Shown here piece by piece: positions 1-37,580 of a stretch of DNA of 64,000 bases. The notes beneath the pieces were generated by a model. It was not told the DNA's origin. It saw nothing but the letters and a program-made list of their open reading frames with translations, and searched no databases. Source of the stretch: Octopus bimaculoides (Eukaryota); NCBI RefSeq assembly GCF_001194135.2, contig NC_068993.1, positions 63,031,992 through 63,095,991 of the forward strand, read 5' to 3'. Positions within the stretch are counted from its first letter, which is position 1, and each line of letters begins with the position of its first letter. The translations under genes were made by a program, and so were the position numbers.

Positions 1-1961
1 TATATATATATATATATATACACATGCATACATACATACATACATACATACATACATACATACATACATACATACATACATACACGCATACATGCATGCA
101 TGCATGCATACATACATTTGTATATTTCTAACGAACAAGATATAAATGAATGTGTTTATGGGGTAACGTGAGGTATTGTTTATGAACACATCAGCTATTT
201 GTCTGCTCTAGAATATATAACGTAATTGTATCTACTCCAACGTTTATTTAACAAACCATCAAGATAACATGTTGCAGACTAAATTATTTGAGAGGTCTTA
301 GTGAATAAAAAAGCCAATGTTTACAACTTTGTGAAAACCGAGAGGTCCTTTATTCGATCTAACGTATTATCCCTACTTTTCATATTCTGCAAGCAACACA
401 TTCTTTCTTTCTGAATATCGTAAAGCAAGATGTAAACAGGAGTAGAAAAAATTTTTTGGTAAGTTTAATTGATAGCGACAGAAGCGGTATTAATGCCAAA
501 AGGTAATCTTGATCTCGTGGGGGTTGTGTTAGAACAAAGAATACTACGTTCTCTCATAAGGACTAGTGGTGTGTAAAAGCACACGTATCGTCTGCTACGG
601 CCGCCGCCGCCGGTGGTAGTGGTGGTGGTGGTGGNNNNNNNNNNNNNNNNNNNNNNNNNNNNNNNNNNNNNNNNNNNNNNNNNNNNNNNNNNNNNNNNNN
701 NNNNNNNNNNNNNNNNNNNNNNNNNNNNNNNNNNNNNNNNNNNNNNNNNNNNNNNNNNNNNNNNNNNNNNNNNNNNNNNNNNNNNNNNNNNNNNNNNNNN
801 NNNNNNNGTTGAGATCTCGGTCACTAAATTGCCATGGAAACCGAGTAACTGGCCCTACGAATCCTTGGACTCGAGACTATGCTTATGTTTTTTTTGTTTT
901 TTTTTTTCTTGGGGGAATCATTATTTCTTTATATTTAATAGTTTATCCCTGACAGAAAGTCATTTGTTGTTTTACTTGAGCATCTCAGCGTCTACTCCAT
1001 TATGTTTTTATCTCTCTCTCTTCACAAATTGTCTTCACGTCCCAATTGCATTCGGCAAACTAGTCTGTTGTGACACGCAGTGTCTAGTAGGGTGTGTCGA
1101 AAGTGTTGTTGCAGCTGTCTCCTTCAGCCTGGAATAACGACAGTTGACAGGTCAGCTTATTAGATACGTAGTAATGATATACTAAAATTACAATAACCGA
1201 GGACAGTTATAGCTGCCTCTCCAAAGAAAAAGAAAATGGGAAACTTCTGGAACGCACCTCGGACACGATCACTGCCTTCCATAGTTTCGTGGTTGGGTTA
1301 TCCAAAGTCAGAATACTCGATAGGTTTGCAAATAGATTTCGAGACATTGAACCAATAAATGAAAATATTCAGTTCTTTATTTAGAACTAACCAAGACAAA
1401 AGAGAGAAAAACTCGCAGGAAAAGCTAACAATACAAATCGCTTCGTGTCAGAGTTTATTAGGATATTGTCAGTGTTTATTACGAGAGAGCAAGAGTTGAA
1501 ACGTTGAGGACTTTTTCATAATTACATAAGACCACTGTCTATTCAGAAGAAATTGCAGAAGTTAATATGATGGTACAGAATAGCAGGATTACTTCCCCTA
1601 CTTGATTGATTTCTATTTTCTTGCTAAGAAGGAAGGTATCAATAGAATATTTTGCTCACGAACTCGAGTAATGTCTGAACTGATTTAATGACGCTATAGC
1701 AAGAAGACCATGGTACTTCGTTATTTTGTATCCGATACAACGCAAATATCTTAATTACATTATTTATTTATTCTAAATTTCTCAGTTATCAACTCATCTA
1801 TGTTTGGGATAAAAAGATGAAAGAAAACGGTTTGTAATGTAATTACATCTTCATTTGCGCATCCTCACATGTTCCCGTCATTCCTTGCGAAATGGCGTCA
1901 CTGTACGCATAAAAGGAAAACAGATCTTCAAACGCCATTTTTAACAAAACAAAATTCTGTT

Positions 1962-3232: not shown

Positions 3233-4263
3233 CTGTCGAAGAAACAAAAGAAAAGAAATTAAATGTTATGTAATTTCAGTTTTACAAGGTTTTCGTCTCC
3301 ATCCTCTTTCTCTCTCTCTCTCTCTCTGCACATATTAGTATTATATGTATACCGGGAGTTTGGGTTAAATTTGATGCTTTTTATGCCTCCTTTCTTCTTT
3401 CTTCTTCAGTAACAGCTTGCTGTATTGAATATTCAATGGTATTGGAGAGCATAAGGATTAACGTTGTAGTTGAGAAAAAAAGCTGACATGGAAAACTAGA
3501 AGCCATCTGAATATTGCAGAAAAAGAGTTACCTGTATCATGATGATTCGAACTGGGTATCAAAATACCTCTTGAACCCTTACTTGTTCCATATATATATA
3601 TATATATACGACGGGCTTCTTTCAGTTTCCGTCTACCAAATCCACTCACAAGGCTTTGGTCGGCCCGAGGCTATAGTAGAAGACATGTATGTATGTGCGT
3701 GTGTGAAAGTAAAGTTGTAAATCAATTTACCTGCAAATCTTGTCAAAGGTTTCTGAAGACTTGTAGTTAAAAATCAACATTTTCACACAGTCCATAGCCC
3801 GGTACATGTTACAAAGACCAGCACCTTCCAGACCACCAACAAATACTGGGGGAGCAAAACAGAAATTAACGTAAAATTATTATTTCATGCAGACATTTAA
3901 AAAAAAAATTCATTTACTTAACANNNNNNNNNNNNNNNNNNNNNNNNNNNNNNNNNNNNNNNNNNNNNNNNNNNNNNNNNNNNNNNNNNNNNNNNNNNNN
4001 NNNNNNNNNNNNNNNNNNNNNNNNNNNNNNNNNNNNNNNNNNNNNNNNNNNNNNNNNNNNNNNNNNNNNNNNNNNNNNNNNNNNNNNNNNNNNNNNNNNN
4101 NNNNNNNNNNNNNNNNNNNNNNNNNNNNNNNNNNNNNNNNNNNNNNNNNNNNNNNNNNNNNNNNNNNNNNNNNNNNNNNNNNNNNNNNNNNNNNNNNNNN
4201 NNNNNNNNNNNNNNNNNNNNNNNNNNNNNNNNNNNNNNNNNNNNNNNNNNNNNNNNNNNNNNN

Positions 4264-4326
<63 letters not shown>

Positions 4327-4707
4327 AGCGAAGCTATCAAAAGTGATAGTATTAAAAGTGAAACAATATAAAAGTGAAACTACTATATCGCATTACAATA
4401 GAGATTTTATTGTTGAACTTTTGACACGTAACATCGAAACAGTCTAAGAGATTGCTCCGGGCTCGTATTAGGCAAGAAGCTGGAATGTGTAAAATTTGAA
4501 TGAAATCGCTTGAATGAAATCGCTTTGAATGAAATCGCTTACATCCAAGGAAATATTGGTTCAATACCTAGTATTGTGAGGGAATGAAATTCCCTTCAAA
4601 CAATATGTATATATTAAGCATATAGTTTATATCCAGTTAAAAAAGGAAAAGAAAATGGAGATAAGGAAGTTAACAATTATATATTATTAACAAATTGGTC
4701 ATTTTCG

Positions 4708-5020: not shown

Positions 5021-5836
5021 TAAGGATTACCAATTTGTTAATAATAAATAATTGCTAACTTCCTANNNNNNNNNNNNNNNNNNNNNNNNNNNNNNNNNNN
5101 NNNNNNNNNNNNNNNNNNNNNNNNNNNNNNNNNNNNNNNNNNNNNNNNNNNNNNNNNNNNNNNNNNNNNNNNNNNNNNNNNNNNNNNNNNNNNNNNNNNN
5201 NNNNNNNNNNNNNNNNNNNNNNNNNNNNNNNNNNNNNNNNNNNNNNNNNNNNNNNNNNNNNNNNNNNNNNNNNNNNNNNNNNNNNNNNNNNNNNNNNNNN
5301 NNNNNNNNNNNNNNNNNNNNNNNNNNNNNNNNNNNNNNNNNNNNNNNNNNNNNNNNNNNNNNNNNNNNNNNNNNNNNNNNNNNNNNNNNNNNNNNNNNNN
5401 NNNNNNNNNNNNNNNNNNNNNNNNNNNNNNNNNNNNNNNNNNNNNNNNNNNNNNNNNNNNNNNNNNNNNNNNNNNNNNNNNNNNNNNNNNNNNNNNNNNN
5501 NNNNNNNCACACATACAAACATGCATACATATATATATATATACACATGTACATAAAACAAAACGGAAAAAACACTTCTTATTTTAACTTCCTCGTGAAA
5601 TAGTATTCAGTTTTGTTAAAGTTTATACTGAAGCTTATCCCACCCAATATATTTGTATTTTGTAGTTTTTGTTGTTGAATTTGTTTTTGTCGTTGTTGTT
5701 TTTGAATTCTATTTATAAATTATTCCTTTCTAACGTTGGTACCAAACTGAAAATTTTGAGTGTGAGCATAAAACTAGACTAAACCGACAATAGAACGTAA
5801 ATGTATATAAGCAACTATGCATACAGATGTATGCGT

Positions 5837-8888: not shown

Positions 8889-9195
8889 AGCACCTTGGGC
8901 AAGTCTCTTCTACTATAGCCTCCGGCCAACCAAAGCCTTGTGGGTGGATTTGGTAGACGGAAACTGAAAGAATCCTTTCGTATATATGTGTGTGTGTGTT
9001 AGACCCCACACATCATTGCTTGACAACCAATGTTGGTGTGTTTGCGTCCCCGTAACCTATCAATTCTGCAAAAGAACACCGATAAAATAAGTACTAGGCT
9101 TACAAAGAATAAGTCCTGGGGTCGATATGTTCGACTAAAGAGGCAGTACTCCAGCATGGCCGCAATCAAATGACTGAAACAATAAAAGAATAAAA
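8889..9195 (+). mobile_element. SINE family A, 5'-truncated
   Basis: Homologous to 40281-40635. Confidence 0.8.
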
Positions 9196-9207
9196 TAATA
9201 TATATAT

Positions 9208-9371
9208 ACGACGGGCTTCTTTCAGTTTCCGTCTGCCAAATCCACTCACAAGGCTTTGGTTAGCCCGAGGCTATAGTAGAAGACACTTGCACAAGGTGCC
9301 ACACAGTGGGACTGAACCCGGAACCATGCGGTTGGTAAGCAAGCTACTTACCACACAGCCACGCCTGCGCC
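9208..9371 (-). mobile_element. SINE family A, head half
   Basis: Reverse complement of the family A head. Further copies at ~3608-3687(-), 9590-9950(+), 10190-10257(-), 15106-15496(-), 18010-18160(+), 23900-24060(+), 47290-47520(-), 50725-50890(+), 52630-52980(+), 62060-62200(-). Confidence 0.8.
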
Positions 9372-11085: not shown

Positions 11086-14000
11086 ACTGTTGATAAACAG
11101 CTGATTGAAACAGGGAAATGGAGAATTTCCAATTTTTCCAAAAAGATAAAAGAAATAAAAATTAAGTGAAATACAAAGAAACCGCTAAGTCAATTTCTGT
11201 TTTGTCTGATTGATTCGTCGTGTAAGGCACAGAGCCAGAAACTGTATTTAGGAAAGAACAATAAGATTATGTGATGTTCATGCGTTTTCCCCCAATAATG
11301 ACGAATGCAATAGAAACCCTTAGAGCATCACATACAATACTTTGTCGTTGCTGTTACTGTTGTTGTTGTTATCGTTGTCATTGTTGTTGTTGTTACTGTT
11401 GTTGTTTAGCCCCAGGATATCTTTGATTGCTAATTTATTCTGGTGATTGCCTATAACCATTAGATGTTTATAAACTAATTTTATCGATACTTCTTCCAAA
11501 AGTCTTATGCTTTTTTGTTCACACCTACTTGTGTAGGTTGAACTACGGAAAACGTAGAGAGAAAGAAATTTTGCTATTTCTTGTAATAAATACATCTTAA
11601 TCAGACCCTTTTCTTGGATGCTTATTATACTACTCTTAATCCGCAAATTACATTTTTGCTTGCTTGGACCCCCCAAAAATCTTATATGGACCCCTTGGGG
11701 TCAAATGGACCGCGATTGAGACCACTGTTTTAAGAATTCAAACTTGAACAAGCAGACCTTTGACCAAAGACACTCTATCAATATACACCCCGCTTTTTAT
11801 TGTTGCAAACATTATCTGATAGCGAATGAGTTAAGGAGGGTTGGCTGCTATTCTTAGCAGGTCGTGTGGTTACGTAGAAATTCCCTTATTGGCTCGTTTT
11901 AATCGTTGTTGTCGGTTATGGCTGTTGTTCGATGTTGATATCATTGCTGCTATTGATTTTGTTTGCCGTCATCAATGGCGTATCGTCGGTGTTCATAAAA
12001 ATACCACAAGTATTATTATTTTTAATGTCGAAGTTGCTACCGTATGTATTTTTTTCTCTCTCCGATGTTAAGTACAGTATCAACTAAACAATACAGTTAT
12101 TTTATGGAAACGGAAGTGTTCGTGTCTAGCTTTCAAATGAATTATTTTTCTATGATAGCTGGATTCAAGTCAAACTGTTACCATATCAATTAGCATTGTT
12201 CACTGTTGCTTCCAGTTTGACGCACTCACATATCCTCCGATCTGATTATACATTATCTGCCAACAAAGAAGTAAGATGTGGTCGCTCATCCTGCTAGAAG
12301 TAGTAATCAAATCGCTCTAAAAGCTCAGTCAACCGTATTTAAAAAGAAATGATCTTCATTGCAGCACTCTTGATCATAAAAATCCTTGGGCTCGGCTGAC
12401 TTGGGAATAAAATAACAAGCACTAGTTTCTTTCGTTTGACCTTATTTGGTGTTGTCAAGCTTCAGTAATACGAGCAACGATACGGCATTTATCGCACTGT
12501 GACGAAGTCCACCTTAACAGTTTCTGCTGTGGTCTCCTCCGTAATTTATAATCTGCGGGTGTACAAAGATAGATTGAAGAGCAGAGGACTCAATGTGACA
12601 CTTCAGGCTATCACACTGCATTCTATACGGTTTATCACTGCCTGCAGGAGTTGTAGATAATCATCACCGATTGTGTGTGATATGATTCCTTGATGGTGGC
12701 TACACAACAACAGCAACATCCAAAGATGGAGCCTGTAGTTTCCCTTGACTTCCGAGAAACTACAATTAAATTTCATGCAAACAACAGTCTGTCGTCTTAA
12801 AAATAAATAAGACAACTAAGATTACGTAGTCCTGGGTAAACCATCTGAATATCAAATGGGGTGGTTGCGGCTGGCACGCTTTTGAACGTAAGCCTGCTTG
12901 AGCAGAGTTGATCTAGATCTAAACAGCAAAAATGGCAAGATACATCGTTGAAACTGTTGTTCAAGCATGAACGTAATACGATCTTATCTGTTATTTGCCA
13001 CATATATCTGAAATTCGGAGTCTAATTTGCAATTCAAGTTATGTACATGCGTATACACATTCATAAAACAGCGTGAACATTTTTTATAAAATATTTATAG
13101 ATTGAAGAAAAAACTAGGACAAACGAATCTGATGTCATGATTTAATTAATTAAAAAAAGAGTTAGATAAGGTTTCACTAAAAAAAATTTGATAACTATGA
13201 GACATTGAGCAATTTCCAGAGTAAAAGAGAAAAGAAAATATTTCGAGTGTGACACTTTGCGAAAGAAATTGTATTAAATGATTCCCAATAAGTGTAATAT
13301 CACGTGATGGAAATATGAACAAAACAGACGACATATTAAGCCTTCCTTCTAAAAGGTGTTATCTGCATGGAAATTTGTTTTAAGTCATCTGTTTTTTTTT
13401 TTTTTGGTTTTTTCTTATTCCGATAAGTCTTGGAATATGAGATGAGACTCGAAACCTGAAACCTAAAAAAGGAATTTTTTCTTTTTCAGCTTGTATTTCA
13501 AATCTAAGATGTCAACCAAATATATTTTTTCTCAATTTATTTAATTAATTTTTGTTTTAAATCGAGCGTTGATTATCTGAATTAAGAAATTGCTGCTTAT
13601 AAAACCGCAAGTGTGGGTGATGATATATATATATGTATATANNNNNNNNNNNNNNNNNNNNNNNNNNNNNNNNNNNNNNNNNNNNNNNNNNNNNNNNNNN
13701 NNNNNNNNNNNNNNNNNNNNNNNNNNNNNNNNNNNNNNNNNNNNNNNNNNNNNNNNNNNNNNNNNNNNNNNNNNNNNNNNNNNNNNNNNNNNNNNNNNNN
13801 NNNNNNNNNNNNNNNNNNNNNNNNNNNNNNNNNNNNNNNNNNNNNNNNNNNNNNNNNNNNNNNNNNNNNNNNNNNNNNNNNNNNNNNNNNNNNNNNNNNN
13901 NNNNNNNNNNNNNNNNNNNNNNNNNNNNNNNNNNNNNNNNNNNNNNNNNNNNNNNNNNNNNNNNNNNNNNNNNNNNNNNNNNNNNNNNNNNNNNNNNNNN

Positions 14001-16881
14001 NNNNNNNNNNNNNNNNNNNNNNNNNNNNNNNNNNNNNNNNNNNNNNNNNNNNNNNNNNNNNNNNCTCTCTCAGATTTCAAGCAACAACAGAAATAAATGA
14101 GTCCTTCTGACCCAAGGTTACACATTTTTAAAGGTGAGGTCGACGTCTGAATCAATCACACATTTTATATTGGCACATATTTCATACCTCCAAACCGATT
14201 CACAAACATATAAGGGCCCCAACTCGATATTGATTTCTAACAAAGCCACAGATTTTGTTGGTGGGGTGGGAACTGTCTTAGTGTTGATCTTCTATTGTAA
14301 TTCATCTGAGATCGCTTAACACTTCTATTAGAAGGAAATACTCAGGCTGGCTTGAAATTAAAACCCCTGCTTGTGTAACAGGCACCGAACCCCCACGGCT
14401 CTTAATGTCTCTAAACAACGTTCCTTATCATTATTTTAGGGTCCTAACAAGTATACGTGGATGGTCAAAATAGTTTTTAAAAATTCGTTTTCAACCAGTT
14501 GAATCCTGGCACCGAAAAAAGTATTTTGCGAGACAATCTTTCTGGCTTTCTAAGTCTTAGAAATTTTTAGACGATGCCCCTGGTCATCTTCCTGTTATTA
14601 TTGGACATCGCTTTCACAGCTCTTGGCGGCAATTGTTACTTTGAAGGTTTTTTTGAAGAATCTTCATGCTAACGACGAAAGAAAATGCAACCGCACTTGC
14701 AAAATTCCGACAAAAAATTGCAATTTGATATAAGAAACGCGGTTAAAAATATTCATGAGCCATCGGAAAGTAGTGACAGACAATAAGCGACATGAAAGCC
14801 GCTTGAAACCAATTTAATTACGCTGTGCTAACGTTTTCGCTGATTTTCTACACCAAGAACAAATTATTGAAGAACTGGCTAACACTGGAAGAGAATTTGA
14901 TATCGATGAAATAAACGGTACCGGATATTTGTAATTTTCCTGAATCACATACAAAAAAAAATTAATCGGTCGCAACTTTATTAGTTAGGATCGATATCGA
15001 ACTTACGAAGAGTCGAATAATCAAGACGTCAATTAAAATGAAATGTCTGCCAAGTTTCGTTGCATTCCTAATGAGCTGTTGAACAGTGAACTCACTGCTT
15101 CATTATACTTTCTTTTATTCTTTTACTTGTTTCAGTCATTTGACTGCGGCCATGTTGGAGCACCGCCTTTAGTCGAGCAAATCAACCCCTGGACTACGTT
15201 AAGGGTACACATGTCTGTGGAGTGCTCAGTCACTTACACGTTAATTTCACGAACAGGTTGTTCCGTTCATCGGATCAACTGGAACCCTCGTCGTCGTAAC
15301 CGACGGAGTGCCGCGATAAATATGTGCGTATGTATGTATGTACGACAGGCTTCTTTCAGTTTCCATCTACCAAATCTACTCACAAGATTTTTGTTGGCCC
15401 GAGGCTATAGTAGAAGACACTTGCTTAACGTTCCACGCAGTGTGACTGAACCCGGAACCATATGGTTGGGAAGCAACCACACAGCCACGCCTGCGCATGC
15501 GTGTCTTTAGTGATCGAAATGCCTCCAATTAGATAACGGAAACCCTTAAAACCATTTAAAAATCAAACGTTAAGGATGTTTGTCGCGCTTCACCCTGGTT
15601 AATCTGACCAAAGATAAGAGACGTTCCAGTAATGACCATCTCCTCATTCTTCTCACCCCCAATATGGTGTACATACGACAATGTCTCTTATATAAGTCTT
15701 CGCCGTTGTTTATCTCCAAATCGGCGCTGATGAAGCAGACTTTTGATAAAAAGAGTTCCTACCGTGACCACCACATGTTTTCACTGCCTTTATGATTACC
15801 TTATTTATCATCACCTATTTATGATGGTGTGAAGGTGCGTGTCTTAGGGTGTTGCACTCGCGATTGCCAGAACGCGCGTTCGATTCCTGGTCCGGGCGGC
15901 GCGTTGTGTTCTTGAGTGAAACACCTCATTTCACGTTGCTCCAGTCCACTCAGCTGTTAATGGGTCACCATGCAAGTGGACAGTCTACCGATCGGGGTGG
16001 GGAGTTGGGCATGGTGGACTGCAGACCTAGGCAGTGGGATGGTGTCATTCAAAAGCTAAAACAATGCGAAGTGCATTGTGACCAACGTTGTATAGCAGCA
16101 CCCCATAGTCTGGTCAATACTGTGATGCTCCGACTAATGACGGTAGGATACGATATAAGAGGGAGATTGGTCTACTATTCCAAGAGGTTTCTTCCCTGGT
16201 TTATCATTCGATGTTTATATCGATCAATTTGAGCGCCAGCTTCCTCATTGGCTCAATCGAGTATACATGGTTGATATGATGAATTAAGAGATGAGACACG
16301 CGATATTGTAGTGCATACAACATAAAAGTTTTGCTGATCTGAGATCAAACTCACTCAAACAAACGAACAAAGACGAAGAGACAAGAAGAGAAAAACAAAA
16401 TATGTATTTTTGAAAAACAATTTTTGCGTAATTTCATTTCTATCTTTTTTAATTCTTTTTCCATGCACAATTTTGGTGAGATTTTTTTTCTTTCGTTTTC
16501 TTTTTTCGTATTGCCAAGCCAGGTTTTCTTTCATTAAAAGTAATAAAATAAAACTTATGTATTATCATGTGTGGTTTTCTTTTCACATTACTTCTAGAGT
16601 ACACGATTTCTATGGCGTCTGAGAAACCTATTATGTCACACAGTCAAAAGTCTGATGTCAACAAAAAAAAAAAAAAAAGAAAAGAAACAACGCAAAGTCT
16701 CGTTTCTATTCTCTTGCATCTCTAACAACATTCGATCTTCGAAAGAAAAGGCTTTTCTGCTTTCAGTCGACTTCCGACATGATTAAAAAGTATCGAATGT
16801 CTGTGTGTGTACGTGAGTGAGTGTGTGCCTGTATGCATATGTATATATGTGTGCCTGTGTATACATATGTATATATATATA

Positions 16882-18309: not shown

Positions 18310-19250
18310 TTATTATAAATCTTCCACTGAGGAGGGACCCGGTTTCCAACAAAGATACAAGGCTCCATCTTTGGGATAAAGTTAACACAAATTCACATTT
18401 GGAACTTGAGAAAAGTCTTACATATTTTTTACTGTTCCGCTCACAGTTTGCACTTGTAATGTACGAATTAGCCGGTCGAGTTCTCTTTGTGAAAATCCCA
18501 GTTTATCCAGATTCTCCTTTAAGCATTTACTAACAAAGCTTAGTGCTCCAATTATTATTGGTATGAATATGAATTCATAGTCTGAATATAGAAGCGGGAG
18601 GTTTCGAAGCAGTTGTCCATAGATTCCTCTTTTTCTTTGATTTTCAAAGAGATATTCATATCTGCAGGGCAGGTAACCTCTATGATGGTACATACCTTTG
18701 CTCTTCTGTTCCAAACAACCATATCCAGCCTGTTATGCTTACATTTGACAGAAGTTTTGATGGTAATATTCCATCAATATTCCTTGCGTTGGGATTTTCT
18801 AAGTTTATTTCAAGACAGACTATTTTGCGGATGGCATTGTAAATTGTTTTAGCAACAATATTGTGCCGCATAGGGAGGTAGTACCGTGACGACATTTTAG
18901 GACAGCTGCTAATTACATGCGCAATGTCTTCCACAGAAACATGACATAGCCTACACATGCGGTTGCACCTTGGAATTACGAGAGTGTCACTGTGTCTCTT
19001 GTTCACCAAGTGTAGTTAAAAAACGGTTACAAGTTCAGATCCGTTCCAGACGATACTTTTCGGCTTTACTCTGTCAATGAACCGGAAGTGAATAATTCGT
19101 TACTAGTGATGGAAGTAGAATCAGTTTGAAATAGCATTCTGTAGATCTTACTTAACGTGTATAGAAAGCCACAATGCTGCAGTATCCACCTTGAGGAAGC
19201 TTCTCGTATACACGTATAGTGCTTTTTAGCGTTTGCATCTATTGATACAC
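18310..19250 (-). mobile_element. Degenerate 5'-truncated RLE-class (R4/Dong or NeSL-like) non-LTR retrotransposon
   Basis: CCHC knuckle CRLC-x7-H-x4-C followed by RHNIVAKTIY. Then, across frameshifts, a restriction-like endonuclease: KHNR(L)DMVVW...IIEVTCPADMN...KIKEK and IPIIIGAL. Confidence 0.85.
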
Positions 19251-19913: not shown

Positions 19914-20516
19914 GTTTGTGACTGGCTTTTTTCTTTTGTCTTTTTTTCTTCTTCTTCTTCTTCTTCTTCTTCTTCTTTCGTTCGATACTTTCCCCAGACC
20001 TTTCCCTTTGAACTAGCCATGACCACCTCGCTAAATATTTTCTACGAGTCTTCACATCCGGTTGTCTGTCGCTGACATTCAAATTTGGTTTTCAATACCA
20101 ACTGGAACCGGACTTTGATGTCATCGGTTTACACTTTTTTCTATATGTGTGTGCACGTGCGTGTGTGCGTGTATTTGTGTGTATATATGTGTGTGTGTAG
20201 AGAGAGAGAGAGAGTGAGTGTGTGTGTGTGTGTGTGTGTTAGGTGTGTGTAGAGTGTTAGGTGTAACGTACAGAAATTGCATATTGAGAAAAAAAGTGGT
20301 CAGAATTTTGGAAAAAAAATCTTTTTATTTCATTATTATTAATGCTTTCGTTCCTTTCTCGAACTTGTCAAATAAAAAAATTTGTGAATGCACAAACAGC
20401 TCGTTCATTTATATAAAACATGTTTTTTGGCGGGGGTTTTGTTTAGAAGAGAACATTGTTTTTGCTTTTTGGGGTGAGGTTCCATGACAATGGAGCTGGA
20501 TAGATAGAAATATAGG

Positions 20517-20549
<33 letters not shown>

Positions 20550-20669
20550 NNNNNNNNNNNNNNNNNNNNNNNNNNNNNNNNNNNNNNNNNNNNNNNNNNN
20601 NNNNNNNNNNNNNNNNNNNNNNNNNNNNNNNNNNNNNNNNNNNNNNNNNNNNNNNNNNNNNNNNNNNNT

Positions 20670-20724
<55 letters not shown>

Positions 20725-20725
<1 letters not shown>

Positions 20726-21030
20726 GAGGGCGCCTGGCCTAGTGGTGAGAGTGTTGCAGTCACGATCGAGAGACCGAGGTTTCAATTCCTAGACCGAGTG
20801 ATGCATTGTGTTCTTGAGCAAAGACACTTCATCTAACGTTGCTCCGCGGTCACTTCGACACCTGGCTCGTGACACACCGAGCACCTGTTCAGGCAACGTC
20901 GATCTGATGAAGGGAGACAACTAATGTGCGACACACAGATTTGATCACAATAAACGAATCAATTGTGCTGGTCGTTTGGCAAAAAGTTGAACGCTCATAT
21001 GTCGTCGTCTTCGACGGCAGAGTCCGTCAT
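20725..21030 (+). mobile_element. tRNA-head SINE (family E); relatives at ~15835-16110(+), 22805-22925(+), 22940-23043(-), 39545-39645(+)
   Basis: A-box TGGCCTAGTGG, B-box GGTTTCAATTCC, then TGTGTTCTTGAGCAAGACACTT; no tRNA 3' half. Confidence 0.7.
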
Positions 21031-22553: not shown

Positions 22554-24871
22554 CTAGCAGCAGCACAAGTACCTGTGTCACATGTCTTAAGTGTCTTCAG
22601 AACGAAGAAAATAAGTTCTGAAGACGTTCTAAAAAAATAATGGATGGACGTTATTGCAACAAAATATCGTTCATATATCAAATATATAAGAAGAAACATG
22701 AAAATGGGAATGAACAAGTAAGAAAGAAAGATGAGATCGAATCAAATGAGAATTGAAATTCTATCTCTCAGTTAAATATATAACCACATTTCTTTTATTC
22801 TGTGGAGGCGCATAGCCAAGTAGTTAGAGCAGCAGACTCGCGGTCGAGGGATCGCATGTTCGAATCTCTGACCAGGCGATGTGTGTGTGTGCTTACGAGC
22901 GAAACACCTAAGCTCCACGCGGTTCCGGCAGAAGCCATGTGAAATAAAGTGTCTTGCTCAAGGACATAACGCGTCGCCGAAAATTGAACTCACGACCTTG
23001 TGATCGTGAGCCGAATACCGGAACCACTGAGCCACGCGCCTTCAACCCGGTGTCTTGTAATGTCGCTAAGACAGCCCTGATCGGAAATTTGGTGAACTGA
23101 ATGAAATTTAGCGTGGCTGTTATAGAGTTTGTAAAGTTGTTGCATTTCAGGGTCATATCATTGCTATTATGCAAAAGTGTCGTCAGTCCAAAACGTTGCT
23201 TTTTCAGAAAACGAAAAAATACTTTCACCATTTCACATCAAAACCGTTGTACTACACATTGACAACTTTTTTGATATCTTAGTACCTGATGCAACTGGAG
23301 ATACGATAGTTTGAACAAAAGAACTGGCTACTGCAAGCAAAAATAAATATTGAAAAAAAAACGCATTTGACCAAACTGAACATTCGACAATTTAACATAA
23401 TGGTTGCAGAGTGTTGCGTTGATCCACCGAGTTGTATACCTCGACATGAAAACGTTCATCTAGCATCTAGATGAAATATTTAGAGAGAAAAACTAACATG
23501 AGGTGAGAAAATACAAGCAGATGCCACATCTATTACAAGCATGGATTGTGAATGAAAATGTTTATGGGGTCAATTTGACATGGAAGATCGGTTACCGTAG
23601 AAAAATGCAAAAGAATGAAAGGTTGCTTCTTTTTTATAATAGTAATAGAAAGAAGAAAGAGAAAGAATGCGAGATGTGAGTGCTGGGGAGAAAGAGAGAG
23701 AAAATATAATTTGGCAAGAGACCAGAGATTAAATATTTTCAGTATGAAAAATTAAAACGCCAGGCAGATTGATTTCTTCAAGATGCATTTAAGGAATGCA
23801 GTCAAAAGATGTACGTCATCTCAAGTATGAAAGCTTTACTTTCTCGCAGAATTTATGAACAGGAATGGACTATTTCAATATTCTTACGAAAATCTAAGTA
23901 TTTCTGGTCTCACGTGGTTAAGAAGATCGTTTTGCCAAACATGTTGTCTTGGGTTCAGTCCCACTGCCTGGCACCTCGTCAAGTGCCTTTACTGTAGACC
24001 TGGGCCTACCAAAGCCTTGTGAGTAGATTTTATACACGAAAACTGAAAGAAGCTCGTCATGTGTGTGTGTGTGTGTGTGTGACTGCTTGTGTCCTTCACA
24101 CACACACACACACACACACATACCTCCCTTTTACACACACACACACACACATATACTCACACAGTTTGAAATGTTTGATTTTTTTTCGCCGTAGAATTTC
24201 CACCACCCCCACTACCACTTTGCCATCACCCTTCCTTCCGTATTCCTCCATCACCCCTTCCGTTCTCGTTCATAAGTTGTGACAGAAAACACAAGAGTAT
24301 TATTATAAAATGAAAAAAACTCTTGTCAATAAACAGAAAGAAATATAATCCAAGTAACAAATGCTTTCGATTTTTACGATGTGTCATCTAGGGTTTCACA
24401 CATAAGTAGCGAGAAACTCTATGAATAGCTGAACAGCAGAAGGGCTTCAGAAAAGAAGATTCCACTTGAAGCAAGTGTTACGGCCCTTAACCTCTTACAG
24501 CCGACGAGAACAGGGCTGCATCCAGGCCATGACGGCTGGATCCTTCTCCATTGTCAGATTCTTTGTTATTTGTCTGTTGTATATATGAGTTTGTGGCAGT
24601 AACATGACCACCACTAAATCAAATAGGACGGGTACATTCCGAATCAGTCTAATGAGAATTAGATTGGGAAGATGGGAGGAAAGCAGGAACCACGAGAAGA
24701 ATAGAGTGGATTTGTAACATGCTTAGCCATAGTAGAACCGTAGCAGGAAAGGGACTCAACACTTTTGGGCTTCCATACAAATGGCCAATTATTAAGCGAC
24801 ACTCACTCCCTGAAATATGTACGCTTCCTGTTTTAAAGCATTTCCGGTCATAGTATGCGTGACTTTATATG

Positions 24872-30338: not shown

Positions 30339-30383
<45 letters not shown>

Positions 30384-31194
30384 NNNNNNNNNNNNNNNNN
30401 NNNNNNNNNNNNNNNNNNNNNNNNNNNNNNNNNNNNNNNNNNNNNNNNNNNNNNNNNNNNNNNNNNNNNNNNNNNNNNNNNNNNNNNNNNNNNNNNNNNN
30501 NNNNNNNNNNNNNNNNNNNNNNNNNNNNNNNNNNNNNNNNNNNNNNNNNNNNNNNNNNNNNNNNNNNNNNNNNNNNNNNNNNNNNNNNNNNNNNNNNNNN
30601 NNNNNNNNNNNNNNNNNNNNNNNNNNNNNNNNNNNNNNNNNNNNNNNNNNNNNNNNNNNNNNNNNNNNNNNNNNNNNNNNNNNNNNNNNNNNNNNNNNNN
30701 NNNNNNNNNNNNNNNNNNNNNNNNNNNNNNNNNNNNNNNNNNNNNNNNNNNNNNNNNNNNNNNNNNNNNNNNNNNNNNNNNNNNNNNNNNNNNNNNNNNN
30801 NNNNNNNNNNNNNNNNNNNNNNNNNNNNNNNNNNNNNNNNNNNNNNNNNNNNNNNNNNNNNNNNNNNNNNNNNNNNNNNNNNNNNNNNNNNNNNNNNNNN
30901 NNNNNNNNNNNNNNNNNNNNNNNNNNNNNNNNNNNNNNNNNNNNNNNNNNNNNNNNNNNNNNNNNNNNNNNNNNNNNNNNNNNNNNNNNNNNNNNNNNNN
31001 NNNNNNNNNNNNNNNNNNNNNNNNNNNNNNNNNNNNNNNNNNNNNNNNNNNNNNNNNNNNNNNNNNNNNNNNNNNNNNNNNNNNNNNNNNNNNNNNNNNN
31101 NNNNNNNNNNNNNNNNNNNNNNNNNNNNNNNNNNNNNNNNNNNNNNNNNNNNNNNNNNNNNNNNNNNNNNNNNNNNNNNNNNNNNNNNNNNNNN

Positions 31195-31226
<32 letters not shown>

Positions 31227-31283
31227 GGAAGAAAGTGGAGAGCTAGTGATTAATATTTGTTTATGAATAAATTGATAATCCTT

Positions 31284-34770: not shown

Positions 34771-35510
34771 TCCACTGCCTTTTTGACTGACTTCCAAAGC
34801 TTCAGATTCTTATCTTTTCCGACATTCCCCAAGTTTATTCGCGATTGTAACTTCCGAGAATCGAAACCGAGTTGCCGCTTCTGTTGACCGGAGACTTCTC
34901 TCTACAGTGTTTACTAGACTTTCTAATAATAATTATAATTCTAACTGGGGTTTTTTTCCCCTCGTTTATTTTCATTTCGTTTCTTATGAAATAAACTCTG
35001 CAAAAAATCCTAATATAACGTACATTATGATTTCTTCAGCAGATTTACCAGTTTAGGATTGGGGCTTAACTGACCGAATTTACTTCTAAATATTACTGTT
35101 ACGATAAGCGGTAATCAGCCAAGAAATGAATTTGCCCTCCCATACTGCTGTTTCAATACCAATTAAGAATACCCACCCTCATCCCTGACAACCCCAAAAT
35201 ATATAAAACAAATATTTAGAAAATATTTTTTTAAAACATTATTATCCATATGAATAATATATTTTTGAAATTTTTGATAAACTTATAAATATATGCAAAT
35301 GTTTTAATACGAAATAAATGAATCGGTCTTTAAATCGTGATATTATGAAGCGTAAAATTATTAAGGAGGTTGATTGGAACGGATAGGATAATGCGAAGAA
35401 TCCGTTAAGTATTGGAAATGGTAGTTAAAACAAGTTTAAAAAATGAATAATGGAGGTCGGGTTTCGGAATTCACTGGTTCCAAGTCAGGTTTTGTAAAGA
35501 ACCATTTTGG

Positions 35511-35622
35511 TACCGGAAGTCGCCATAAGCCAGCTTGGTTGAATGTAAAACCGAATGTAGTCTAGCGATTTTTTTTTGATTCTTCCATGTAGCTGGTCAA
35601 CTTAGTCGTCTATTCTGTAAGT
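35511..35622 (+). promoter_or_regulatory. Candidate CYFIP core promoter and non-coding first exon (ends 35616)
   Basis: ACCGGAAGT ETS consensus (35512-35520) abuts a CGCCAT YY1-like core (35521-35526). A GTAAGT donor follows at 35617-35622. The CYFIP ATG exon has an acceptor and so needs an upstream exon. CpG depletion begins ~3 kb downstream. Confidence 0.55.
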
Positions 35623-36052
35623 ACTTTTAATTTCTAGTTGCTTCAACTTGATTTCGAAACACCATGTATAGCGATTCCATCAGCGTACGGCCTTGTTTTC
35701 CTCGCCGCACTCCGTTGGTAATAGAGGAGGGGAGGGCAAGAAAGAAATCCAAACCAAAAACTCATTGTTACAGCTTTCACTTTATTCTTTCCTTTTTTAA
35801 GTAAATATTATGATTATCCTCATCATTTCTCTCATTATTACTCTAACTGTTAATATATCGCTCCTTAATTCTGCTAACAAGTAAACTAATCAGGAATCTG
35901 GTGTCTTCAGGGGTTCATTTTCGCTACATAGTGTGTAGGAAAAGCTAGTTTTTGGTTACAAACAATTATTATAATCATTATTATTATTACTAATACTAAT
36001 AATAATAATATTAAGTCTTATCTTACTATCTCCCCATAAAGCTTTTGCTTTC

Positions 36053-37157: not shown

Positions 37158-37545
37158 GTGTGTTTCCGTGCACAATGTGGTATGAATTAGTTAACTGAGG
37201 CTGCATATTTCTGCAAGCTCGCTCTAGTCTTACACATTCACATTCCTTGCCATTGTTCATCTCGTCTTAATGCATGTAGGAAATGCATGAACATCACAAC
37301 CTATGCTTTCACTTCTGCAGAAGCACTCTGATGTGTATGTATAGAATGTTGAGTAAATCCGATATCCTCTCGGTTTCTGAAGATTTGAAGTTGTAGTTGT
37401 CTAGTCCCAAAGTCAGCACTGATCATGATCAAGCAGGCCCATGATCAAAGACATTCTAGCCATGCCATCTTACTCGGACTTAGTGTAGCCAACACTACAT
37501 CATCCAATGTATCCGTTATTTTAATGGACGGTTTTGGGGTCTTTT

Positions 37546-37580
<35 letters not shown>

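What the first reader, a model, noticed from the sequence alone, without database searches (positions are those of the whole stretch)
35543..35592. Three AUG-stop minimal uORFs in the putative CYFIP 5' leader
Every ATG in the candidate exon is immediately followed by a stop: ATGTAA 35543-48, ATGTAG 35555-60, ATGTAG 35587-92. The remaining leader (51147-51198) has no ATG. At uniform composition, 3 of 3 is (3/64)^3, about 1e-4; AT bias and post-hoc selection weaken this. Start-stop elements are known ribosome-stalling regulators (mammalian ATF4, Arabidopsis NIP5;1). A triple array on the mRNA of a translational-repression/WAVE hub would be a novel control module.
Basis: partly seen in the sequence, partly recalled or inferred. 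Interest (0 to 1): 0.72.

Follow-up and report, generated by a model that had tools for sequence, protein, structure and literature searches.

The report
Three start-stop codons near CYFIP's promoter
Three ATG-plus-stop hexamers really do sit in the best candidate for the non-coding first exon of the CYFIP gene, but nothing shows they are in the mRNA, a cluster like this is expected by chance somewhere in the window, and their poor initiation contexts point to weak, ordinary minimal uORFs rather than a new control module.

Summary
The three hexamers are exactly where stated: ATGTAA 35543-48, ATGTAG 35555-60 and ATGTAG 35587-92. A GTAAGT follows at 35617, and 51147-51198 has no ATG.

CYFIP is confirmed on the + strand. 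Its ATG is at 51199, and the acceptor at 51146/51147 is conserved in a related species.

Indirect evidence supports a far-upstream first exon. CpG observed/expected (o/e) drops from 0.80 to 0.33 at about 38,050, so the methylated gene body starts 13 kb before the coding sequence. The candidate segment is unique in the window, is the CpG peak of the 33-52 kb stretch, carries ACCGGAAGT, and has the only GTAAGT in 30-38 kb.

No cDNA or orthologous sequence could be obtained, so exon status, transcription start site (TSS) and conservation remain untested.

"3 of 3" needs a TSS between 35453 and 35542, because ATGs at 35443 and 35450 open longer uORFs. For a pre-specified exon, P is about 1e-4. Window-wide, such a run arises in 54% of simulated sequences.

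All three AUGs have a pyrimidine at -3, no G at -1 and AU-rich flanks, which is the profile of unoccupied human start-stops.

Start-stops occur in more than 1400 human genes, with up to nine per leader, so the kind is known.

Most likely these are tolerated, leaky minimal uORFs with at most mild dampening, or they are not transcribed at all.

The parts
35543..35548 (+). Start-stop 1, ATGTAA. Context ggttgaATGt: -3 T, -1 A.
35555..35560 (+). Start-stop 2, ATGTAG. Context aaccgaATGt: -3 C, -1 A. It lies 12 nt downstream of start-stop 1, in the same frame, and shares GAATGTA with it.
35587..35592 (+). Start-stop 3, ATGTAG. Context tcttccATGt: -3 T, -1 C. It lies 32 nt downstream of start-stop 2 and is preceded by a T9 run and the pyrimidine tract TTCTTCC.
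35453..35616 (+). Largest extent of the candidate non-coding exon 1 in which the three start-stops are the only ATGs. The true 5' end (TSS) is unknown.
   Evidence: ATG map. Unique sequence in the window and the CpG o/e peak (1.39 in 35250-35749) of the 33-52 kb stretch scanned, both.
35512..35527 (.). ACCGGAAGT (ETS-type core-promoter motif) abutting CGCCAT (YY1-like core). This is a possible TATA-less promoter element.
   Evidence: CCGGAAGT occurs 3 times in the window against 0.71 expected. Naming the motifs is from general knowledge, not a test.
35617..35622 (+). Consensus 5' splice-site hexamer GTAAGT. The exon side (tct) is poor.
   Evidence: It is one of 12 GTAAGT on the + strand and the only one between 30 and 38 kb. 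Its PWM rank is 16 of 280 GT sites in 33-38.3 kb.
37965..38162 (.). CpG-depletion change point (best estimate 38,050). CpG o/e is 0.80 upstream and 0.33 downstream. It is read as the start of the germline-methylated CYFIP gene body.
   Evidence: LLR 156. TpG and CpA are in excess downstream. The octopus methylation patterns come from PMC9476566.
35617..51146 (+). Putative intron 1 (15.5 kb) if the 35617 donor is used. No coding ORF or Pfam hit was found inside it, and it contains dispersed repeats.
51147..51198 (+). ATG-free 5' leader part of the first coding exon, behind the acceptor ttttatttcag|G.
   Evidence: The acceptor and leader are conserved in the related contig L001.
51199..51411 (+). 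Start of the CYFIP coding sequence ([22 protein letters not shown]...). The Kozak context is strong: caggATGg. Further exons run to 63576.

Best explanation
The three hexamers lie in the most plausible first, non-coding exon of CYFIP, next to a TATA-less, ETS-type promoter. They behave as tolerated minimal uORFs rather than a dedicated switch.

**Mechanism (inferred)**
- Each AUG has a pyrimidine at -3 and necessarily a U at +4, so most scanning 43S complexes leak past all three. They then reach the strong-context CYFIP AUG (A at -3, G at +4).
- The minority that initiate meet a stop in the A site at once. They are recycled or resume scanning.
- The net effect is at most a mild, constitutive dampening of CYFIP translation.

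**Why 3 of 3**
- Chance.
- A local duplication (GAATGTA twice, 12 nt apart).
- Survivorship: uAUGs that open longer or overlapping uORFs are removed by selection, while AUG-stop in weak context is the least harmful form and persists.

**Shown:** the hexamers, their contexts, the gene's identity, the split leader, and an upstream TSS zone.
**Inferred:** exon usage, TSS position, and leaky scanning.
For: - Sequence and contexts.
- CYFIP coding sequence and its strong main AUG.
- Acceptor at 51146/51147 conserved in a related species.
- CpG o/e step at about 38,050 (0.80 to 0.33, LLR 156) puts the TSS upstream of 38 kb. This matches the octopus class of constitutively expressed genes with an unmethylated TSS and a methylated body (PMC9476566).
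- The candidate segment is unique in the window, is the CpG peak of the 33-52 kb stretch scanned, has CCGGAAGT, and has the only GTAAGT in 30-38 kb.
- Occupied human start-stops prefer a purine at -3, G at -1 and GC-rich flanks. The three here have none of these.
- The leader has no significant structure: z = -1.2.
- A run like this is expected somewhere in 54% of random windows.
Against: - For a pre-specified 164-nt exon the pattern is rare, 6e-5 to 2e-3. It is the only such run on either strand of the window.
- In human cells most expressed start-stops are ribosome-occupied (88 against 21), and inserted start-stops repress reporters 5- to 10-fold despite the U at +4. Three in series could therefore matter more than I assume.
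- There is no transcript evidence that the exon exists.
- The exon side of the donor is poor (tct|GTAAGT).
- A second CpG- and ETS-like cluster at about 34,800-34,900 could be the real promoter.
Confidence: 0.45

Rival explanations
1. The hexamers are not in the mature mRNA. They are a chance cluster in promoter, intergenic or intronic DNA. Either the TSS lies downstream of some or all of them, or the real first exon is elsewhere in the unmethylated 33-38 kb zone.
For: - A window-wide run of three or more start-stop ATGs occurs in 54% of simulated sequences, and a 3-in-50-nt cluster in 19%.
- ATGTAR is not enriched.
- The donor's exon side is poor, and other GT sites score higher in 33-38.3 kb.
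- ETS-type promoters usually start transcription close to the motif (general knowledge). That could put the TSS at or beyond 35543.
- A second CpG-dense, ETS-like patch lies at 34,800-34,900.
- No transcript evidence was found.
Against: - Several features coincide within about 110 nt: the only GTAAGT in 30-38 kb, a rare ETS 8-mer and the CpG peak of the 33-52 kb stretch scanned.
- This lies 2.4 kb upstream of the gene-body methylation step.
- The segment is unique, not a repeat.
Confidence: 0.35
2. One reading: a functional array of three start-stop elements that retains ribosomes and substantially gates CYFIP translation. This could be cooperative, because a ribosome held on the third AUG (35587) would place a queued complex about 32 nt upstream, which is on the second AUG (35555).
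For: - The pattern is rare for a pre-specified exon, and it is the only such run in the window.
- Start-stops are strong repressors in human cells and are mostly occupied.
- Cap-proximal position is typical of functional elements.
- The 32-nt spacing is about one ribosome width. This is read from the sequence, and the queuing idea is inference.
Against: - Contexts are poor at all three: -3 T/C/T, -1 A/A/C, AU-rich flanks. These resemble unoccupied elements.
- There is no downstream structure.
- Exon and TSS are unverified, and no conservation data exist.
- The first two copies may be a duplication.
- The pattern was selected after the fact.
Confidence: 0.12
3. The repeated GAATGTA / CATGTAG motifs act at the DNA level, as transcription-factor sites in the core promoter. 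Their reading as AUG-stop would then be incidental.
For: - GAATGTA occurs twice, 12 nt apart, immediately downstream of the ETS/YY1-like motif.
- The segment looks promoter-like.
Against: - No known factor motif was matched by any test here.
- Resemblance to TEAD-type GGAATG sites is imperfect and comes from memory only.
Confidence: 0.05

Closest known systems
Start-stop (AUG-stop) elements of human 5' UTRs, such as ATF4, MORF4L1, SLC39A1 and PSPC1 (Rendleman et al., NAR 2026, PMC13338717; bioRxiv 10.1101/2021.07.26.453809)
   Same: [quoted passage not shown]
- The position would be cap-proximal.
- The gene is a dosage-sensitive signalling hub.
- Several elements in one leader are documented, up to nine.
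   Different: - Transcription of the segment is unproven here.
- The initiation context is poor: pyrimidine at -3, no G at -1, AU-rich flanks. Occupied human elements prefer a purine at -3, G at -1 and GC-rich flanks.
- No occupancy, conservation or reporter data exist.
AtNIP5;1 AUG-stops (Tanaka et al. 2016, as summarised in PMC7503886)
   Same: - The minimal ORF is AUGUAA.
- There is more than one copy in a leader: two in NIP5;1.
   Different: - The plant element responds to boron and triggers mRNA decay.
- Nothing here suggests a ligand or decay.
- The organism is an animal and the gene is unrelated.
Ordinary tolerated uAUGs bypassed by leaky scanning (Kozak scanning model; general knowledge)
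   Same: - The upstream AUGs are in weak context, ahead of a strong-context main AUG.
- There is no elongating uORF, so the cost to main-ORF translation is minimal.
   Different: Three out of three being start-stops is more orderly than a typical leader. That is why the functional reading cannot be excluded.

Membership tests
Start-stop (AUG-stop) translational regulatory elements | AUG immediately followed by UAA, UAG or UGA | tested here: met
   ATGTAA at 35543, ATGTAG at 35555 and ATGTAG at 35587.
Start-stop (AUG-stop) translational regulatory elements | Located inside the transcribed 5' UTR of a mature mRNA | tested here: inconclusive
   - Indirect support only: the CpG step at 38,050, a conserved acceptor, and GTAAGT plus an ETS motif.
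- No cDNA or transcript was reachable.
- The TSS is unknown.
Start-stop (AUG-stop) translational regulatory elements | Initiation-competent context as seen in ribosome-occupied elements: purine at -3, G at -1, GC-rich flanks | tested here: not met
   Here -3 is T/C/T, -1 is A/A/C, and exon-1 GC is 39%.
Start-stop (AUG-stop) translational regulatory elements | Conserved above the flanking sequence in related species | not testable with these tools
   No orthologous exon-1 DNA was found. The six-frame composite protein search gave no hits and both metagenome scans were empty. The only relative recovered, L001, covers exon 2 only.
Start-stop (AUG-stop) translational regulatory elements | 80S retention on the hexamer, and de-repression of the main ORF when it is mutated | not testable with these tools
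   This needs Ribo-seq and reporter assays.
CYFIP (cytoplasmic FMR1-interacting protein) gene | Collinear protein homology to CYFIP across multiple exons | tested here: met
   - tblastn of a human CYFIP1 sequence (written from memory) found 13 collinear exon matches on the + strand, 51214-63576. A further hit at 58212-58331 overlaps one of them in the query and looks spurious.
- Database hits at 55-70% identity are named CYFIP and carry PF07159 and PF05994.
Invertebrate gene-body methylation with an unmethylated TSS (octopus pattern 'MP 2') | CpG-depleted transcribed body abutting a CpG-normal promoter and upstream region | tested here: met
   - CpG o/e is 0.80 (1-38,050) against 0.33 (38,051-64,000), with LLR 156 and a TpG/CpA excess downstream.
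- This is a sequence proxy. Methylation itself was not measured.
- The pattern description comes from PMC9476566.

The most novel reading that the evidence does not exclude
The three hexamers are all in the dominant CYFIP mRNA and form a cooperative start-stop gate. A ribosome retained on the third AUG-UAG holds a queued pre-initiation complex about 32 nt upstream, on the weak-context second AUG. That second AUG is backed by an in-frame first copy 12 nt further up. Three individually weak elements would then add up to a strong, possibly stress-resilient throttle on a WAVE-complex and FMRP-partner protein, conserved among cephalopods.
Probability: 0.06. Interest if true: 0.55.

Novelty: new member of a known kind. 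Interest (0 to 1): 0.25.

Why it matters
CYFIP links Rac/WAVE actin remodelling with FMRP/eIF4E-dependent translational repression, and it is dosage-sensitive in neurons. A built-in translational throttle on its own mRNA in a large-brained invertebrate would be a neat regulatory loop, and an invertebrate example of multi-copy start-stop control.

As things stand, the elements are unverified in the mRNA, statistically unremarkable at window scale, and in poor initiation contexts. The element class is also already well described, including several copies per leader. The practical value is therefore a cheap, well-defined test on existing RNA-seq data rather than a discovery.

The more solid by-product is the CpG-depletion step at about 38,050. 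It delimits the 5' end of the CYFIP transcription unit from sequence alone.

Tried and rejected
1. **Transcript evidence through the protein database.**
   - The exon-2 peptide returned only exon-sized genomic ORFs that read through into the intron.
   - A 366-aa multi-exon query returned no protein closer than 75% identity (at most 67% among hits covering the whole query), so no same-species or closely related transcript.
2. **Exact look-ups.** The window's exon-2 ORF and the 40-aa ORF spanning start-stops 1 and 2 are not on record.
3. **Orthologous exon-1 contigs.** A composite six-frame translation of 35280-35800 drew 5951 word candidates, and none scored E<=10.
4. **Metagenome scans.** Scans for the predicted splice junction and for the ETS/YY1-to-start-stop pattern gave 0 matches each.
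5. **Non-coding RNA.** Rfam and tRNA scans of the whole window found nothing. The segment is not a known RNA.
6. **Repeat check.** Self-BLAST of 35200-35900 found no other copy in the window, so it is not a repeat.
7. **RNA structure.** The spliced leader folds with z = -1.2, so no start-stop-plus-hairpin arrangement is seen.
8. **Another gene in 38-51 kb.** No convincing ORFs and no Pfam hits, so this was rejected.
9. **Bacterial promoter and terminator scan.** This was run but does not apply to a eukaryotic locus, so I ignored it.
10. **TATA-like and octamer-like strings at 35284-35301.** These are expected by chance in AT-rich DNA. A TSS there would add six elongating uORFs to the leader. 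Not pursued.
11. **Known CYFIP uORF regulation.** A literature search found nothing specific.

Full report
**1. The observation**

The sequence is as described. ATGTAA is at 35543-35548, ATGTAG at 35555-35560 and ATGTAG at 35587-35592. A consensus donor hexamer GTAAGT follows at 35617. Downstream, ttttatttcag|GAAGCAGCAG marks an acceptor at 51146/51147. The 52 nt from 51147 to 51198 contain no ATG, and the next ATG (51199, caggATGg) opens the reading frame.

"Every ATG in the exon" is true only for a 5' boundary between 35453 and 35542. ATGs at 35443 and 35450 open ORFs of 40 and 15 codons, and four more ATGs lie between 35318 and 35418.

**2. What the gene is**

A tblastn with human CYFIP1, written from memory and used only as a guide, gives 13 collinear exon matches on the + strand, from 51214 to 63576. 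A further hit at 58212-58331 overlaps one of them in the query and looks spurious. A 366-aa concatenation of the window's exons hits proteins named cytoplasmic FMR1-interacting protein, carrying PF07159 and PF05994, at 55-70% identity. The gene is CYFIP. I could not verify the taxon. The window is an AT-rich, microsatellite-rich draft with N gaps.

**3. Is there an upstream leader exon?**

Two independent lines say yes.

(a) The acceptor is conserved.
- The one related genomic contig I could recover is L001 (Logan, SRR11869394).
- It is identical in protein over exon 2 and about 80% identical in surrounding DNA.
- It keeps the acceptor tttcag|GAAGCAGCAGCAGCATC and an ATG-free leader. An alternative upstream cag in the window is caa in L001.

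(b) CpG observed/expected (o/e) changes abruptly.
- It is 0.80 over 1-38,050 and 0.33 over 38,051-64,000.
- The maximum-likelihood change point is at 38,050, with a support interval of 37,965-38,162 and LLR 156. TpG and CpA are in excess on the depleted side.
- The depleted domain runs without interruption through all CYFIP exons, and it begins 13 kb before the start codon.
- I found no other gene in 38-51 kb: no convincing ORFs and no Pfam hits.
- In Octopus bimaculoides, a large class of highly and constitutively expressed genes has a methylated body and an unmethylated TSS and promoter. The authors say this resembles other molluscs and many invertebrates (PMC9476566).
- Reading the CpG step as the 5' edge of gene-body methylation is an inference. 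On that reading, the CYFIP TSS is upstream of about 38 kb.

**4. Is the 35.5-kb segment that exon?**

It is the best candidate, but it is not proven.

For:
- It is unique in the window.
- 35250-35749 has the highest CpG o/e (1.39) of the 33-52 kb stretch scanned.
- It carries ACCGGAAGT followed by CGCCAT. CCGGAAGT occurs 3 times in the window against 0.71 expected.
- 35617 is one of only 12 GTAAGT on the + strand, and the only one between 30 and 38 kb.
- My rough estimate for an ETS 8-mer falling within 100 nt upstream of one of the 12 GTAAGT is about 0.05.

Against:
- The exon side of the donor (tct) is poor. The site ranks 16th of 280 GT sites in 33-38.3 kb with a generic donor matrix.
- A second CpG-dense patch with an ETS-like ACTTCCG lies at 34,800-34,900.
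- The TSS cannot be placed from sequence. If it lies close to or downstream of the ETS motif, as is common for such promoters (general knowledge), the first hexamer could be missing or too near the cap.

I put the chance that this exon is used at about 45-50%.

**5. Is the pattern more than chance?**

- The local base rate of ATG followed by a stop is 5.9-6.1%.
- For a pre-specified 164-nt exon, simulation gives 6e-5 for three or more ATGs that are all start-stops. It gives 5e-4 to 2e-3 for three or more start-stops.
- It is also the only run of three in the window on either strand.
- However, a random sequence of this length and composition contains such a run 54% of the time, and a 3-in-50-nt cluster 19% of the time.
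- ATGTAR is not enriched in the window.
- The first two copies share GAATGTA at a 12-nt offset, in frame. That looks like one microduplication rather than two independent events.
- The significance therefore rests on the independent reality of the exon.

**6. How it would work**

Human start-stops retain ribosomes and repress the main ORF. They occur in 1417 of about 19,000 genes, mostly singly but with up to nine per leader (PMC13338717). AtNIP5;1 has two (PMC7503886).

Ribosome-occupied elements prefer A or G at -3 and G at -1, with GC-rich flanks. Unoccupied ones show mixed preferences (bioRxiv 10.1101/2021.07.26.453809). Here:
- -3 is T, C, T and -1 is A, A, C.
- Candidate exon 1 has 39% GC.
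- The spliced leader has no unusual structure (z = -1.2).
- The main AUG has A at -3 and G at +4.

The best-supported mechanism is leaky scanning past three weak AUGs. The few ribosomes that initiate terminate at once. The result is at most mild dampening.

The orderly 3 of 3 is explained by chance, by duplication, and by selection removing uAUGs that open longer uORFs. I cannot exclude a real gate:
- Start-stops repress strongly even with U at +4.
- Three in series add up.
- The 32-nt spacing between the second and third AUG is about one ribosome width, so queuing could boost initiation. This last point is inference only.

**7. Comparison and novelty**

In kind, these are start-stop (AUG-stop) elements. 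Of the family's defining features:
- the hexamer itself is met;
- location in a 5' UTR is inconclusive;
- a favourable context is not met;
- conservation, occupancy and effect are untestable here.

A triple array is not a new architecture. No CYFIP-specific uORF regulation turned up in the literature. If real, this is a new member of a known kind.

**8. Verdict**

The gene identity and the split leader are supported, and a distant TSS is supported by a striking CpG step. The claim of a novel triple start-stop control module is not supported by anything beyond the hexamers themselves, and it is weakened by their contexts and by window-scale statistics.

| Reading | Probability |
|---|---|
| Transcribed but weak or tolerated | about 0.45 |
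| Not in the mRNA | about 0.35 |
| Functional gate | about 0.12 |
| DNA-level motif | about 0.05 |

Interest: 0.25.

Noticed in passing
window 37965-38162 (change point about 38,050); domains 1-38,050 and 38,051-64,000: There is a sharp step in CpG o/e, from 0.80 to 0.33 (LLR 156), with a TpG/CpA excess on the depleted side. It starts 13 kb upstream of the CYFIP start codon and continues through all exons. It looks like the 5' boundary of germline gene-body methylation and delimits the transcription unit from sequence alone.
   Followed up: yes
window 50735-50900; also 8894-9058, 47352-47513, 40357-40488, 3623-3685, 9223-9308, 15357-15442, 52705-52804, 23982-24045: A dispersed repeat family (71-90% identity between copies) occurs on both strands. 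One copy ends about 250 nt upstream of the CYFIP exon-2 acceptor. The related contig L001 stops aligning at 50904, just past that copy, so the insertion may be lineage-specific.
   Followed up: partly
window 37620-37700: The sequence ...gacccggtttcgattcccagctggcac... resembles a tRNA B-box / T-arm (GGTTCGAnnCC), suggesting a tRNA-derived SINE. It sits in the second CpG-dense patch (37500-38000), right before the CpG step. ARAGORN and Rfam report nothing there, and there is no second copy in the window.
   Followed up: partly
window 18418-19009 (- strand): Two overlapping ORFs look like the C-terminal end of a non-LTR retrotransposon ORF2. The Pfam hit to zf-RVT is weak (E = 0.009, below the gathering score). 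The other two CCGGAAGT 8-mers of the window (17390, 19082) flank this element.
   Followed up: partly
window 51166-51171: A near-cognate start-stop, GTGTGA, lies in the exon-2 part of the leader. It is conserved in L001 (CACGTGTGAGTGAG) and overlaps a donor-like GTGAGT at 51168. This is probably chance, but it is the only start-stop-like hexamer in a part of the leader that is certainly close to the mRNA's coding start.
   Followed up: no
window 35284-35301: A TATA-like TATAAATATAT abuts a perfect octamer, ATGCAAAT, about 250 nt upstream of the hexamers. About four octamers are expected by chance in this AT-rich window. A TSS here would put six elongating uORFs in the leader.
   Followed up: no
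window 34800-34900: This is the densest 100-nt CpG bin in 34-39.5 kb (8 CpGs), with an ETS-like ACTTCCG on the + strand. It is an alternative promoter candidate about 700 nt upstream of the proposed exon.
   Followed up: no
L001 (Logan SRR11869394), 1514 nt: This is the only close relative reachable. The exon-2 protein is 100% identical and intron DNA about 80% identical. The 110 nt at 50904-51010, upstream of the acceptor, are about 90% identical, which is more conserved than the rest of the intron.
   Followed up: partly
window 465-824, 3900-4340, 5050-5560, 13630-14100, 20440-20760, 30340-31250, 38486-38495, 48840-49150: Runs of N (assembly gaps) are mostly flanked by TA, CA or other microsatellites. 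The window comes from a draft assembly, so distances across the gaps, including inside the putative intron 1, are approximate.
   Followed up: no
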